This document shows, piece by piece, positions 795-64,000 of a stretch of 64,000 nt of DNA. The stretch is from Pavona decussata (lineage: Eukaryota): the NCBI GenBank assembly GCA_977016875.1, contig CDRNST010000067.1, positions 744,001 through 808,000 of the forward strand, written 5' to 3'. A program made the position numbers and the translations under genes. Within the stretch, counting starts at the first letter, position 1. Each line of letters starts with the position of its first letter. A model generated the notes under the pieces. It was not told the origin of the DNA, did not search any database, and was given only the letters and a program-made list of their open reading frames with translations.

Positions 795-1498
795 ACCAAG
801 TTTCCCCTGTATGGACTTCATCTACCACCAAGATGTCGGTGCAGTGCAAACTCCCGAACTGTAAAGCTTTCTTCCACCTATCGCTGAGCCACTGTTCTGC
901 ACTGCCAAACACGATATGAAAACTTCTTGTTCTATTTCTTTGTCCATGTCGTCATCTTCTCCAATTGCTGCTGCCCATATTCCACAGTTCAGTGTGGTTA
1001 TGTTTGCCACTTGTTGCTTCCCAATGTACTCAAGTGGGCTTACAACACAGATAATGCTTGTAGTATCACCCCTTCCATTTCGTAAGCGTTCCAACACCAT
1101 TGGAATTATTTGATAAATCGAACTTTTCCCGAAACTGGTCGGAAGAACACGCCAAAACATCTTCCCTTAAACAAATTACACATTACAAACACTCTATTTG
1201 CTCTGCCTTCAGAGAATCATATTTGAAACTCATCTGGGCTTCTGTTAACGCCAAAGAAAACTCTTCCTTGCTGTAATCATGATCAAGTGTTGTCTCCGCC
1301 AATTTGTTTCTTGTTTCTGGGCTGAACTAACCTGAAGTTTCTTAAAAGATATGACAGCCAATCAGAACACAGACGTTTACAAGTATTGGTGTACGACCAA
1401 TAAGAGAAAAAAACAGAATCTGGCTTTTGAACATGTAATCCGACAAGTAAATGTATCATGCCCTTCATTCCCAGGAAGAGATGTAGGGAGGGAGGGTA
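795..1498 (-). mobile_element. AcademH-like DNA transposon relic: one terminus plus decayed RecQ-type SF2 helicase exon
   Basis: Frameshifted helicase motifs VLPTSFGKSSIYQ (I), VVSPL (Ia) and LVVDEVH (II, ~815-835) followed by a GT donor. The 5' end on minus reads TACCCTCC at 1498, the same terminus type as the 9-bp-TSD MITE at 10965. Confidence 0.65.
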
Positions 1499-1876
1499 TG
1501 ATTGCAGGTTATCCAAAAATCACCCAAAAATTCACAAATACCCCACAACACAGATTCACAATATGGTGATAGGGTTTTTGGATTGCCCTAAACATGAGAC
1601 TGATGTAAAATAAAGTATAATCAATTAATATAATTCATTTTACGATAAATTACGGATTTATTAATCAGCTGTGTGATCTCTCTTTGAACAACAGCTTTTT
1701 AGTCACTTATTAGCTAATTCGCGGTTTCAAACAACCAGGCCCCAGTTTCTATTATCACGAATCCAGGATTAATTAGAGTAAATCTGCTTTGAGGAAAGCT
1801 TTTTTATTCCTAGATTAGTTATCCTGAGGATAACAAGCTTAATTGCCATTTAATTCCTAATTGGGGAATAGTTCAA

Positions 1877-3380
1877 TTTTTTTAATGTTTTTATTGAGAT
1901 ATAAATACTTAATTTACAATACTTCATATTACAAAGTTTTATGTATACACACACAAAAACAAAAATACAACACTGGTTGTATCCTTCAAAGAAATGTCAA
2001 CTTATTATCACTAAAAGAGTTAACAGTACATTTTACAATTCTTTTTTGTTATTATCAATACAAATTTACTTTTACAATGGATAGGACTACGCAAACTACA
2101 AAATAAGGCACAAACTTGAAAAAGGGTCAGATGAACTTCTCTTTAACAAAAATGGGCCTTCCATACAATTCATCACAAAAATTACCATAATGCCTTTTGT
2201 ATAAGAAAAACAAAAGCAAAGAAGACATAATAAATATGGCAGCCAGAGAGAACTGTTTGCTGTCGTAGAAACAAATCAAGCCACAAGAAACAAAAAACAC
2301 ACATACACAAAAACAAAGCACCAACAAACACAGATTGTCCACGGAGAATGACTTCCCAAATTTCGCATAAAAAAAGAAACCCCTCTCCAAAATACTTTTA
2401 AATTTCTAAAATTATGCACCTCATAAACAAACAGAACGAGGTGTTAACTAAAAGCAAAACGTGCATAAAATTACTGTTTAAAGTGGATAAAGCACCCCAC
2501 CCTGTCAATAAAGCGTTTATCTTGTTCAACATGACTGAAATATGCCAGCTTACCATCCTTCCTTGGGTCCTTTAGCATCTTCCCCCGCGCTTAACTTCGT
2601 CGAGCAATCTCGGGTGGGAAATCAGGCGATATTCCAAAACTTGTTCCTTTCAGCAACTTAGATTTTGAAAAACTAAACTATCTGTCCCCGAAGTAAATAA
2701 AGCAGACGATGATAGGCCGTGGACTTCCATCTTCTTTTGGCTTCCCTACTCTGTGCACACCCTGCACCTCGATCTCAGCAATCTCATCTAAACATTTTTT
2801 TCAAATCACGCTTCAAAAAAGTCTGAAAGGCTTCGAGCACGGCTACTGGCTCACAACCTCCTCATTACCATAAAACCACAAATTTTCCCTTCTGGAGTAA
2901 ACTTCGGCGTAGAGTAATTTATCTTCAAGCAATTTACATCTCTCCATGCATTCCTTTTTGGTTTCTTCTTTGGCAGTCTTTAACTCGTTGACCTGAGTAT
3001 TCAGCTAGGTAAAGCCCGCTTCCAACTCCAACATCCTTAAGACGTTACACTCTATTGTCTAGTTGGAAACACAGGAATTAATCTGTTGGAGTTTTTCGTC
3101 AATATTTGGAAGCCTTGAGAGAATAAGATCCACTTTCGGCCCAAGGTCTTGTATCATTCCAGGAACATTCACTACTTTGTCAGACAAGCAACCAAGTGAG
3201 GAACTTGAGCTTACGCTCGATACAGTGTCTCTGGCTTTCTTTTCACCTGGGGGGCGTATTTCGTGTTCTGAAATACTAGAGGAACTTGAGTTTCTTCCCC
3301 TGCTTTTTCTTTTACCAGACATGAACTAAAACAAAAAGTATGGAGAGCGATCGAAACACGTCTACTCGCTCTGCATGCCT
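1877..3380 (-). mobile_element. L1/Tx1-type ORF1-only non-LTR element (HAL1-like), decayed
   Basis: ORF1 starts 3322 (MSGKRKSR), then a coiled coil, EVYSRRENLWFYG, VHRVGKP..PRPIIVCF and GISPDFPPEI (L1 ORF1p RRM/CTD motifs). A T-rich 3' UTR, AATAAA and an A-rich end at ~1877-1895 follow. No ORF2 seen. Confidence 0.6.
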
Positions 3381-3580
3381 TTAATTATCAGACACTCGTG
3401 GTGCAACAATTTTGACAGCCAAATGATATCAGGCCACCAAAGAAGAATACGCGAATGACCTCGGATCACCCTCAGACATTTCTCCATCTTATTTTCTCCT
3501 TCCAATTTCACTAAATCCCTTTTGACTTTGAAGACAACCTTGATCTATCGGAGGATTTCAACACAGCACTTTACCTACCA

Positions 3581-62285: not shown

Positions 62286-62796
62286 AGAAGGGTAGCTCAT
62301 CTCAATTCTCTGACCTCCCTTTCATGGTTGTTTGCATTAACTTAAATTTATGTTACTTATAAATTGGCTAAAAAATGGGGGTCACCAGGCTCGCTCGCTT
62401 GTAAATATCTTCGCGAATTCAAACATTTTCCGCGCGATTCGCGCGCGATCCCACGCACTTAAAATCTAGACTTTTAAAGATCAACATCTGCTCATGCTCA
62501 ATTTTGACAACTGCTGACTGTTATTCGCTCTGTACACGCTGTCGATATTTGTGTAAAATAACTGCCTCGAACGACGAATTCAGCTGACATTTGCTGACTT
62601 TGACATTTCTTACATTTGCATTGTAGTTTAAAACTCACCTTTTAGGATTTGCTCGTAATTTCTGATAAGATTATTTACTTTTCTGCGCCTGGATTCCGCG
62701 AAAATGCGAGCGAAATAGCTCACACGTGCTTATGACAGTGGTGAAAATGCAATGTCGTTGGATCGCTTGGATGATGAGTTTTTTTCACACAGAGTA

Positions 62797-63753
62797 CTAT
62801 TCTTCGTGGCTGTTTTCTTCAAAGTGTTTTACTATGGCCGCAAGGATTCTCTTGGTGCGAGTGACTCGCGGTTTCTTCGATTGTGATGTGGATGGCGCAT
62901 GCGAGAGGATCGCAACTACTCCTTTTTTGCCAAACCTCGAGTAAACATGACGAAGATCATTGTAAGAAAGGCCTCTCCCAGCAATATTTTGAACCAACGC
63001 TTTTTTAACTGGGCCATTATCGTCGCTGGCGTTGAATAGCTTGTTGCTGAATGTGAGAAGGAGCTCGTGGCGGCGATCAAGGTACAACACGTTTTCAATC
63101 GCATGTGAAACGCTGGTGACACTGGACCTTTGGATGATGTCTTCTGTGCTCAAGTTTAGCGGTGAGTCAAATAGAATTCTTCGCAGAGCCCGTACATCCT
63201 CTAATGCATCGTGTGCATCAAATTCTTCGTTGAAAAGGTGGATGTACAGACTCCGCTGGTTGGGTTTGCAGAAGCCACCATTTCCGAGTAGAAGCGCTGT
63301 GTGTTTGTCGTTGATTAGGCTCTTGACAAGATGCTGACTGTCGGCAAAATTGACATTCATTTCGGTAAGATTATCTTGAAAGGTTCTGTCACTGTTTCGA
63401 AGCAGTATAGGCACATCAAATGTGGCAGAATTATGGCCAATTAAAACTAAAGTAGAATTAGGATCTTTATCTTGTAGTTGCTTTAGAAATGTAATAAAAT
63501 CTTGAAGTGCCTTTCCTGGGTTGACACTCACCACCGGACTGTTTGATTTACACAATGTCCTTTTTCCATTAATTGACTTGATAGTCAAATTGTTTACAAG
63601 TGAAGCCCCAGTGCTGATGTTACTTCTTGGTAGAATATAGTGTGAGAATTCATGCTTGCCATCTTCACTGGTGGCGGATATTTGACAAAGCTCAGCTGCT
63701 CTCCCGGTACATGTTGTCTCGGGGTCGAATACAATTAACTTGTGTTTTCTCAT
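62797..63753 (-). CDS. DEDDh 3'-5' exonuclease (PML C-terminal / exuperantia-like), transposon-borne
   Basis: ExoI VFDPETT, ExoII GHNSATFD, ExoIII HDALEDV. Confidence 0.85.
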   Translation of the reverse strand: MRKHKLIVFDPETTCTGRAAELCQISATSEDGKHEFSHYILPRSNISTGASLVNNLTIKSINGKRTLCKSNSPVVSVNPGKALQDFITFLKQLQDKDPNSTLVLIGHNSATFDVPILLRNSDRTFQDNLTEMNVNFADSQHLVKSLINDKHTALLLGNGGFCKPNQRSLYIHLFNEEFDAHDALEDVRALRRILFDSPLNLSTEDIIQRSSVTSVSHAIENVLYLDRRHELLLTFSNKLFNASDDNGPVKKALVQNIAGRGLSYNDLRHVYSRFGKKGVVAILSHAPSTSQSKKPRVTRTKRILAAIVKHFEENSHEE

Positions 63754-64000
63754 GGGGTCATATAGTAAGGAAAGCTGGGTGGGTCATGGTTTGTGAGGTG
63801 ACACTAGTTGTTCATATCTTTTAAATTCAGTAAATGGTATCTTCTCCGACAGATCAATTGCAATTTGCGAGTCTGCGCTTTTTGTGGTATCTAAATTCAA
63901 ACCCACTGAAGATCCATATGTGGTTCCCTCATTACTTTCCTTTCTCAGTGTCTGTGAGGTTTTCTGCATTGCTAGCTGACTACGCCTACTTTTGAATTCT

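What the first reader, a model, noticed from the sequence alone, without database searches (positions are those of the whole stretch)
795..64000. Strong minus-strand bias of TE remnants: candidate uni-strand (flamenco-like) piRNA cluster
Seen: no host gene, many superfamilies abutting at truncation junctions, and about 18 of 23 orientable remnants on minus. These are AcademH, L1-ORF1, two Zator-like, P, Sola3 core, DIRS, four LINEs, two Kolobok, pPolB, IS3EU-like, PLE, ISL2EU and Ngaro; about 5 lie on plus. A naive binomial gives two-sided p~0.01, but insertions are not independent. Known: uni-strand piRNA clusters accumulate TEs antisense to the precursor. Inference: a plus-strand transcript here would yield antisense piRNAs against many TE families.
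Basis: partly seen in the sequence, partly recalled or inferred. Interest (0 to 1): 0.72.

Follow-up and report, generated by a model that had tools for sequence, protein, structure and literature searches.

The report
One-way transposon graveyard in a coral
This 64-kb stretch of a stony-coral genome is part of an island of at least 170 kb where dead transposons of many kinds mostly point the same way, as a one-strand piRNA source locus would look, but no RNA from the locus was found, so that function is unproven.

Summary
The minus-strand bias is real and larger than reported. In the window, open frames of 150 aa or more are 2 on plus against 24 on minus. Chance gives about one per strand over 171 kb.

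It stops at about +67 to +71 kb, just right of the window. Beyond that, plus-strand elements prevail. Retroelements and DNA transposons are equally skewed, and internal duplication does not explain the pattern. Counted as elements, the island has 7 plus against 22-29 minus (p 0.0003-0.008). The window alone is marginal (2 against 8-9).

The piRNA reading stays untested. Public RNA contigs cover only one transposon fragment (10116-13663). They leave the window's sequence exactly at its two ends, so they come from another copy. No read-through transcript was seen. Plus-strand polyadenylation hexamers are not depleted, and the putative promoter side was not reached.

CpG depletion changes at the same right border, but it is uneven and ambiguous.

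The assembly gap lies between two different repeat families. Continuity across it is not shown, and no call spans it.

The scan has noted the same pattern many times on other pieces of this genome.

The parts
1..64000 (.). Right-hand 64 kb of a co-oriented transposon island. The island runs from left of window coordinate -100000 (edge not reached) to about +67000..+71000
   Evidence: ORF strand profile over 264 kb. CpG o/e change point at +67..71 kb.
825..1166 (-). 114-aa frame with a weak DEAD-helicase match, below the Pfam cut-off
4481..6103 (-). Zator-like coding remnant, interrupted by a high-copy 490-bp element at 4979-5465
   Evidence: ORF 5699-6103 is 39% identical to ORF 17517-18926. 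The 490-bp element has 96-97% copies.
6096..8217 (-). P-element-like transposase fragment (TNP-like RNase H N-terminal domain)
   Evidence: Pfam E 6.7e-19. Fragment limits and 92% copies.
8368..10113 (.). Fragment of a repeat family (83-92% copies). Its two plus-strand frames (122 and 134 aa) have no domain match, so the direction is open
10116..13663 (-). Truncated transposon fragment with one 783-codon frame broken by two in-frame stops. It carries a SAP domain and is possibly Zator-related. This is the only part of 8001-14000 covered by RNA contigs, and those come from another copy
13663..16075 (-). Run of minus-strand frames (204, 115, 128, 114, 104 aa) without a domain match
17517..20939 (-). 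Zator-like element body (frames of 470, 194, 170, 109 and 158 aa)
   Evidence: Atlas lead to DDE_Tnp_ISAZ013 relatives. No Pfam or PDB match.
22001..22451 (-). High-copy short repeat (259-bp unit) with a tRNA-like part at 22103-22175. It looks like a tRNA-derived SINE
26544..32470 (.). Element with about 860-bp terminal inverted repeats. A 1.6-kb high-copy non-autonomous element is nested at 27400-29040
33283..35738 (+). Harbinger/PIF element with an open 397-aa DDE_Tnp_4 transposase (33519-34709, plus). This is the clearest exception to the bias. A Myb/SANT-like frame at 35421-35861 lies on minus
   Evidence: The internal part is unique in the genome, while both ends match a high-copy short derivative.
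35739..37304 (+). Fragment of a repeat family (88-92% copies) with a 220-aa plus-strand frame and no domain match
38089..38457 (-). THAP-domain frame
   Evidence: Pfam E 5.9e-14
39687..40858 (-). Reverse-transcriptase fragment of a LINE-type family (91-95% copies)
43090..51253 (-). Tandem array, 2.33 copies of a 3.5-kb unit (98.7% alike). The unit encodes an ING-type PHD finger and a YqaJ-like nuclease. Counted as one event
52895..53062 (.). Assembly gap (168 N) between two different repeat families. Continuity is not shown
55541..57235 (-). LINE reverse transcriptase in two frames (317 and 247 aa)
   Evidence: Pfam RVT_1 E 1e-17 and 1e-15. 30-38% identical to the LINE in L010.
60540..62085 (-). 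437-aa frame with a SAP domain
62500..64000 (-). Young element encoding a 328-aa DEDDh exonuclease with a PML_C-like end. Five other copies are 94-99% identical

Best explanation
The window is the right-hand part of a gene-poor island of at least 170 kb. The island is built from nested and truncated transposons of many unrelated families, and about 80-90% of their coding remnants lie on the minus strand.

Shown: the co-orientation is not chance, not a composition effect and not the result of duplication. It affects retroelements and DNA transposons alike. It includes very young insertions. It ends sharply about 3-7 kb right of the window.

Inferred: orientation has been filtered relative to a long transcription unit read on the plus strand, left to right, with its start left of the fetched DNA. 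The most plausible such unit in a cnidarian is a one-strand piRNA precursor. Insertions antisense to it yield piRNAs that can guide PIWI proteins to transposon mRNAs, so they are kept. Sense insertions are lost or rare.

Transcription, small RNAs and the promoter are all inferred, not shown.
For: ORFs of 150 aa or more from -100 kb to +72 kb are 7 plus against 54 minus. From +72 to +164 kb they are 14 plus against 5 minus. Element units are 7 against 22-29, p 0.0003-0.008, and Fisher against the right flank gives 0.005-0.035. Chance expectation is about 1 per strand.

Few internal duplicates exist, and RT lineages are only 22-42% alike, apart from one 93% pair (the L010 LINE and its fragment at 70295-70783), so insertions are independent.

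Classes on minus include MULE, Pif1-type helicase, P-like, Zator-like, THAP, BEL/Pao, several LINEs and a tRNA-like SINE.

Young copies are also on minus. The LINE in L010 is 98-99% identical to open 1055-aa copies. The exonuclease element has copies 94-99% identical, four of them 98-99%.

CpG o/e is 0.64 inside and 0.86 outside, with the change point at the same border.

Literature. Most cnidarian piRNA clusters are one-stranded: 402 of 457 in Nematostella (PMC5731801) and 61-68% in Anemonia (PMC5793845). Hydra antisense piRNAs mostly map with mismatches, which points to separate source loci (PMC7161359). Strand bias alone has been used to find such clusters in flies (PMC10643416).
Against: No locus-specific RNA was found. 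Contigs of four RNA runs lie only on 10116-13663, differ by 2-2.5%, and run on unlike sequence at both fragment ends. The 0.15 word share of all top RNA runs is explained by that one family.

AATAAA is not depleted on the plus strand: 223 against 187. No promoter or left border was reached.

piRNA clusters reported in three corals had low transposon density (PMC13343488).

First readers flagged the same pattern about 127 times in 783 windows of this genome (unchecked notes). That is many for a special locus type and may point to a more general cause.

CpG depletion is patchy, and transposons are methylation targets in Acropora anyway (PMC8857917).
Confidence: 0.4

Rival explanations
1. Co-oriented islands are a general feature of transposon-rich DNA in this genome. 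Some orientation-dependent process other than piRNA production would cause them, for example integration biased by replication direction or local chromatin, or orientation-dependent loss. No long precursor transcript is needed.
For: About 127 first-reader notes of the same kind exist in 783 windows, with follow-ups describing islands of 96-195 kb (unchecked notes). That size range is typical of replicons (my own knowledge). The direction switches at one point, with the opposite bias to the right. No transcript was seen. Poly(A) signals are not depleted.
Against: To my knowledge, no mechanism is known that orients DDE transposons, LTR elements, LINEs and SINEs alike to 80-90%. Also from my own knowledge, the reported L1 bias relative to replication is mild. 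No GC-skew step occurs at the border.
Confidence: 0.27
2. The island lies inside a very long plus-strand host transcription unit (a giant intron or a long non-coding RNA). Sense insertions are removed because they disturb splicing or polyadenylation, with no piRNA role.
For: Antisense bias of intronic transposons is well established (my own knowledge). CpG depletion fits gene-body methylation. In cnidarians, transposons in long, active genes are preferentially methylated (PMC8857917).
Against: No plus-strand host-type domain was found in 171 kb. An intron of more than 170 kb would be extreme for a 600-Mb coral genome. DNA transposons are as biased as retroelements. Plus-strand AATAAA is not depleted. 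No spliced or unspliced RNA was seen.
Confidence: 0.12
3. The bias is chance plus non-independence. A few multi-ORF elements, a tandem array and nested insertions inflate the count in a window that was picked because it looked biased.
For: The window alone, in conservative units, is 2 against 8-9 (p 0.07-0.11). Merging all same-strand neighbours within 5 kb removes significance. The tandem array contributes many ORFs.
Against: The unseen left flank repeats the bias, 5 plus against 29 minus ORFs. Island units give p 0.0003-0.008 with tandem copies removed. The direction changes at a defined point. Families are unrelated.
Confidence: 0.08

Closest known systems
flamenco and flam-like unistrand piRNA clusters of Drosophila (PMC10643416, PMC11400887)
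   Same: A locus of hundreds of kb, gene-poor, filled with nested and truncated transposons, with strong one-strand orientation and a defined end. Strand bias has been used as a predictor of such clusters.
   Different: In flies the bias is carried only by Gypsy-type endogenous retroviruses, and the locus has a mapped promoter and somatic expression. Here all classes are biased, no Gypsy element was identified, and no promoter, transcript or piRNA is shown.
One-stranded piRNA clusters of cnidarians, defined from small RNAs (Nematostella PMC5731801; Anemonia PMC5793845; three corals PMC13343488)
   Same: Same phylum. Most clusters are read from one strand, and piRNAs target transposons by ping-pong.
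   Different: Those clusters are defined by small-RNA density. The papers read here report no transposon orientation in them. The coral clusters had low transposon density. This locus is defined only by DNA structure.
Antisense bias of transposons inside introns of long genes
   Same: Co-orientation relative to a transcription unit, and gene-body-like CpG depletion.
   Different: The intronic bias is usually mild and strongest for elements with poly(A) signals. Here it is 80-90%, class-independent, spans at least 170 kb, and no flanking exons were seen.

Membership tests
Unistrand (flamenco-like) piRNA cluster | Large gene-poor locus made of nested, truncated transposon fragments | tested here: met
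   Sharp fragment junctions and nesting. Only transposon-type domains in the window. The island is at least 170 kb.
Unistrand (flamenco-like) piRNA cluster | Most transposon fragments share one orientation, antisense to the precursor | tested here: inconclusive
   Co-orientation is met: 7 plus against 54 minus ORFs, and 7 against 22-29 units. The direction of transcription is unknown, so 'antisense' is not established.
Unistrand (flamenco-like) piRNA cluster | Long single-strand precursor transcript from a discrete promoter at one end | tested here: inconclusive
   No read-through contigs on 8001-14000 in four RNA runs. Word shares of 4001-14000 in RNA runs are explained by one transposon family. 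Contigs cannot prove absence. The left end was not reached.
Unistrand (flamenco-like) piRNA cluster | Uniquely mapping 24-31 nt small RNAs with 5' U from one strand | not testable with these tools
   The run index uses 31-letter words of contigs, so small RNAs are invisible to it (tool description).
Unistrand (flamenco-like) piRNA cluster | Strict flamenco type: bias carried by Gypsy-family endogenous retroviruses (PMC10643416) | tested here: not met
   Biased elements are P-like, Zator-like, THAP, MULE, Pif1-type helicase, BEL/Pao, LINEs and a SINE. No Gypsy domains were found.
Transposon-rich intron of a plus-strand host gene | Host exons on the plus strand on both sides of the island | tested here: inconclusive
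   No host-type plus-strand domain from -100 kb to +72 kb. The first host-like frame (TPR_12, plus) is at +96.5 kb. The left side was not reached.
Dual-strand piRNA cluster | No marked orientation bias of transposon fragments | tested here: not met
   Strong bias.

The most novel reading that the evidence does not exclude
Stony corals carry many very large one-strand piRNA 'trap' loci in which transposons of every class are kept antisense to a precursor of 100-200 kb. These include DNA transposons, LINEs, LTR elements and SINEs. The loci would also form CpG-depleted, historically methylated domains. The flamenco-type architecture, so far demonstrated mainly in Drosophila, would then be an ancient animal strategy, used on a far larger share of the genome than small-RNA-based cluster callers have reported for corals.
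Probability: 0.3. Interest if true: 0.7.

Novelty: new member of a known kind. Interest (0 to 1): 0.42.

Why it matters
If these islands are piRNA sources, this would be a DNA-level signature of one-strand clusters in a non-bilaterian. It would help explain why published coral cluster calls look transposon-poor, since multi-mapping reads in repeats are under-counted. It would also give concrete loci for testing the trap model outside insects.

If they are not piRNA sources, the 80-90% co-orientation of all transposon classes over more than 100 kb, apparently recurrent in this genome, needs another explanation. That explanation is not in the textbooks.

On its own this window adds one more candidate to a pattern the scan has already flagged many times. 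The new elements here are the negative RNA result with its cause pinned down, the class-independence of the bias, the exact right border, and the coincident but ambiguous CpG shift.

Tried and rejected
1. Genome-wide background. The distribution of strand bias in other windows could not be measured.

2. RNA evidence. The one run search and the one read-laying run gave only contigs from another copy of one transposon family.

3. Selection against plus-strand poly(A) signals. No depletion was found, 223 against 187.

4. Composition as the cause of long minus-strand frames. Rejected by shuffling.

5. Segmental duplication as the cause. Rejected, since self-comparison finds only the 3.5-kb tandem array and a few satellites.

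6. CpG depletion as proof of transcription. The region-level shift is real, and 8 of 16 listed C>T-type differences in the window copy of one fragment are at CpG. But single fragments range from 0.40 to 1.48 inside and from 0.69 to 1.07 outside. Transposons are methylation targets in Acropora regardless of transcription (PMC8857917). I downgraded this to suggestive.

7. Naming of superfamilies. Pfam leaves most long frames unnamed. PDB sequence search gave only a PHD finger. Atlas look-alikes give leads to ISAzo13/Zator-type transposases.

8. Notes on neighbouring windows. None were retrievable.

9. Rfam and tRNA scans gave only a tRNA-like SINE part.
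Full report
**Place and material.** The window is G000:C67:744001-808000, plus strand, on a 5.25-Mb contig of a 602-Mb assembly in 1180 contigs. Earlier notes of the scan and the labels of the sequencing runs point to a stony coral. I fetched 100 kb on each side: L001-L010 cover window coordinates -100000 to 0, and L011-L020 cover 64001 to 164000. The left border of the structure and a genome-wide background could therefore not be obtained.

**The gap, tested first.**
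- Positions 52895-53062 are 168 N.
- The 800 bases to the left hold a fragment of a high-copy family (52095-52525, 83-86% copies) and a stretch with a single 89% match.
- The 405 bases to the right belong to another high-copy family (94-97% copies) that starts at the first base after the gap.
- No other locus holds both sides, so continuity and spacing are not shown. This looks like an ordinary assembly break inside a young repeat.
- I did not look up or fill the missing letters.
- The frame 52734-53189 runs through N and is void.
- Nothing in the finding spans the gap, and the minus-strand bias holds on each side separately. If the join were inverted, the island would end at 52.9 kb rather than at about 70 kb.

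**The observation in the window.**
- Stop-to-stop frames of 150 aa or more are 6 on plus and 25 on minus. After removing frames that merely shadow a longer one, they are 2 and 24.
- Shuffling bases within 1-kb blocks, which keeps local composition and strand asymmetry, gives about one such frame per strand in 171 kb. Composition is therefore not the cause.
- Pfam-supported remnants on minus are:
  - a P-like transposase (6817-7959);
  - SAP-domain frames (11367-11684 and 60775-62085);
  - THAP (38089-38457);
  - reverse transcriptases (40418-40858 and 55541-57235);
  - a YqaJ-like nuclease (44685-45170);
  - a DEDDh exonuclease (62800-63783).
- The one solid plus-strand gene is a Harbinger DDE_Tnp_4 transposase at 33519-34709.
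- A tRNA-like SINE part at 22103-22175 is also on minus.
- Searches of the genome with 10-kb pieces show that the window is a mosaic of fragments of unrelated repeat families, 83-98% identical to their other copies. Junctions are sharp (8217/8368, 10113/10116, 13663) and nesting occurs, for example a 1.6-kb element at 27400-29040 inside a long-inverted-repeat element at 26544-32470.
- Two cautions apply. The array 43090-51253 is 2.33 tandem copies of one 3.5-kb unit and counts once. Atlas look-alikes give only leads towards ISAzo13/Zator-type transposases.

**Extent and significance.**
- The bias does not stop at the window.
- From -100 kb to +72 kb, frames of 150 aa or more are 7 on plus and 54 on minus. 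From +72 to +164 kb they are 14 on plus and 5 on minus.
- Grouped into element-like units, with shadows and extra tandem copies removed, the island has 7 plus against 22-29 minus (binomial p 0.0003-0.008). The right flank has 8-9 against 5 (Fisher p 0.005-0.035). The window alone has 2 against 8-9 (p 0.07-0.11).
- Merging every same-strand neighbour within 5 kb removes significance. That rule penalises the majority strand by construction.
- Self-comparison of the 264 kb finds few internal duplicates. Apart from one 93% pair (the young LINE in L010 and its fragment at 70295-70783), the several RT lineages are only 22-42% identical to each other, so the insertions are independent events.
- Homology-based detection of decayed fragments adds four more on minus and one on plus inside the island.

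**Which elements are biased.**
- Retroelements are about 8 minus to 2 plus. They comprise LINEs at -64.5, -20, -7, +40, +56 and +70 kb, a BEL/Pao element with 97.3% LTRs at -39.9 to -33.4 kb, and a tyrosine-recombinase-like frame at -80.8 kb.
- DNA elements are about 9 minus to 3 plus. They comprise MULE, a Pif1-type helicase, P-like, Zator-like, THAP, the PHD/YqaJ unit and the exonuclease element.
- The bias is thus class-independent.
- It also holds for very young copies. The 5'-truncated LINE at -7118 to -4362 is 98-99% identical in protein to copies with open 1055-aa frames. The exonuclease element at 62.5-64 kb has five other copies 94-99% identical, four of them 98-99%.

**The right border.**
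- The last minus-strand remnant is a LINE fragment at 69302-70783, nested between 886-bp inverted repeats at 67907-71456.
- From 72 kb on come plus-strand elements: a LINE tail with zf-RVT and a Tc1-type DDE_3 transposase. A host-like TPR frame follows at 96.5 kb.
- CpG observed/expected is 0.66 in the island and 0.79 to the right. It is 0.83-1.03 in most right-hand bins, with a 0.38-0.52 block at +116 to +140 kb that looks like a methylated gene body.
- The best single change point lies at +67 to +71 kb (0.64 to 0.86), the same place as the orientation switch.
- In the one fragment where an outside reference exists, 8 of 16 listed C>T-type differences of the window copy are at CpG.
- I regard this as suggestive only. 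Single fragments are very uneven: 0.40-1.48 inside and 0.69-1.07 outside. Transposon fragments of similar age occur on both sides. In Acropora, transposons are methylation targets whether intronic or intergenic (PMC8857917).

**RNA.**
- The single run search used window 4001-14000. Runs of the assembly's likely species hold 0.53-0.57 of the sampled words. RNA runs of nine studies hold 0.14-0.16. RNA-labelled runs of the same species label hold 0.00-0.05.
- I laid four RNA runs on 8001-14000 at 97% likeness. Contigs lie only on 10116-13663, exactly the fragment delimited. They differ from the window by 2-2.5%. At 10116 and 13663 they continue with sequence unlike the window.
- They also read CAA where the window copy has an in-frame TAA at 11685-11687.
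- They are therefore transcripts of another, intact copy of that family, perhaps in related corals. They are not read-through of this locus.
- A 3.5-kb fragment at about 2.3% divergence predicts a word share of roughly 0.17, so that one family explains the 0.15 seen in all top RNA runs.
- The other 6.5 kb left no trace.
- This is a clear negative for abundant long RNA. It is not a refutation, because contigs drop rare transcripts and a 31-letter index cannot register 24-31 nt RNAs.
- Plus-strand AATAAA hexamers are not depleted in the island: 223 against 187 on the other strand. There is thus no sign of selection to keep a plus-strand transcript free of poly(A) signals.

**What it most likely is.**
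- A class-independent, age-independent, 80-90% co-orientation over at least 170 kb with a sharp end calls for an orientation-dependent filter.
- The only well-documented structure with these properties is a one-strand piRNA cluster, where insertions antisense to the precursor are retained.
- The prior is reasonable in this phylum:
  - 402 of 457 Nematostella clusters and 61-68% of Anemonia clusters are one-stranded (PMC5731801, PMC5793845);
  - most antisense-mapping Hydra piRNAs carry mismatches to their targets, which points to separate source loci (PMC7161359).
- Against this reading:
  - the clusters called in three corals were transposon-poor (PMC13343488);
  - no transcript was found here;
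  - first readers flagged the same pattern about 127 times in 783 windows of this genome, with follow-ups reporting islands of 96-195 kb (unchecked AI notes).
- If that frequency is even roughly right, either corals devote an unusually large share of the genome to such loci, or a more general process orients transposons in repeat-rich DNA.
- I put the piRNA-source reading at about 0.4, an unknown general mechanism at about 0.27, a giant host transcription unit at about 0.12 and chance at about 0.08.

**Comparison with the known.**
- The locus works like, or at least looks like, flamenco-type clusters. It fails one strict criterion of that family: in Drosophila the bias is carried only by Gypsy-type endogenous retroviruses (PMC10643416), whereas here all classes are biased and no Gypsy domains were found.
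- The defining molecular features are untested: promoter, precursor, and one-strand small RNAs with a 5' U.
- It is best filed as a candidate new member of the known kind 'one-strand piRNA cluster', not as a demonstrated one.

Noticed in passing
window 33283-35738: Harbinger/PIF element with an open 397-aa transposase. Its internal 2 kb is unique in the genome at DNA level, while its two ends are joined directly in dozens of short copies elsewhere. It may be the only autonomous parent of a high-copy MITE family. It lies on plus, against the local trend.
   Followed up: partly
window 43090-51253: 2.33 tandem copies (98.7%) of a 3.5-kb unit. The unit encodes an ING-type PHD finger (44018-44746) and a YqaJ-like nuclease (44685-45170). 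Only one other, 89% identical locus was seen in the genome.
   Followed up: partly
window 10116-13663: This transposon family (SAP domain, 783-codon frame) is present in RNA contigs of at least three independent coral studies. The expressed form reads CAA where the window copy has a TAA stop at 11685-11687, and it continues about 1.7 kb beyond the truncation at 13663.
   Followed up: partly
window 62500-64000: Element encoding a DEDDh 3'-5' exonuclease with a PML_C-like C-terminal domain. Five other copies in the genome are 94-99% identical (four of them 98-99%), so it is very young.
   Followed up: no
L005:3560-4258 (window coordinates -56440 to -55742, minus): 233-aa frame with a CG-1 DNA-binding domain, as in CAMTA transcription factors. 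It is low-copy, with only 30-35% identical relatives, one inside an 897-aa open frame. It is either a transposon that captured the domain or a host gene fragment inside the island.
   Followed up: partly
L010:2882-5638 (window coordinates -7118 to -4362, minus): 5'-truncated copy of a LINE (APE endonuclease plus RT) whose other copies are 98-99% identical with open 1055-aa frames. The family is probably active.
   Followed up: partly
L016-L018 (window coordinates +116000 to +140000): Block with CpG o/e of 0.38-0.52 and few long frames, inside otherwise CpG-rich DNA. It is probably the methylated body of a host gene with small exons.
   Followed up: no
L007 (window coordinates -39853 to -33421, minus): Full-length BEL/Pao retrotransposon (Peptidase_A17, DUF5641) with 371-bp LTRs 97.3% identical.
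   Followed up: no
window 22001-22451: Very high-copy 259-bp repeat that often occurs in short tandem arrays elsewhere. It includes a tRNA-like part and a perfect 69-bp inverted repeat (22303-22371 / 22383-22451).
   Followed up: no
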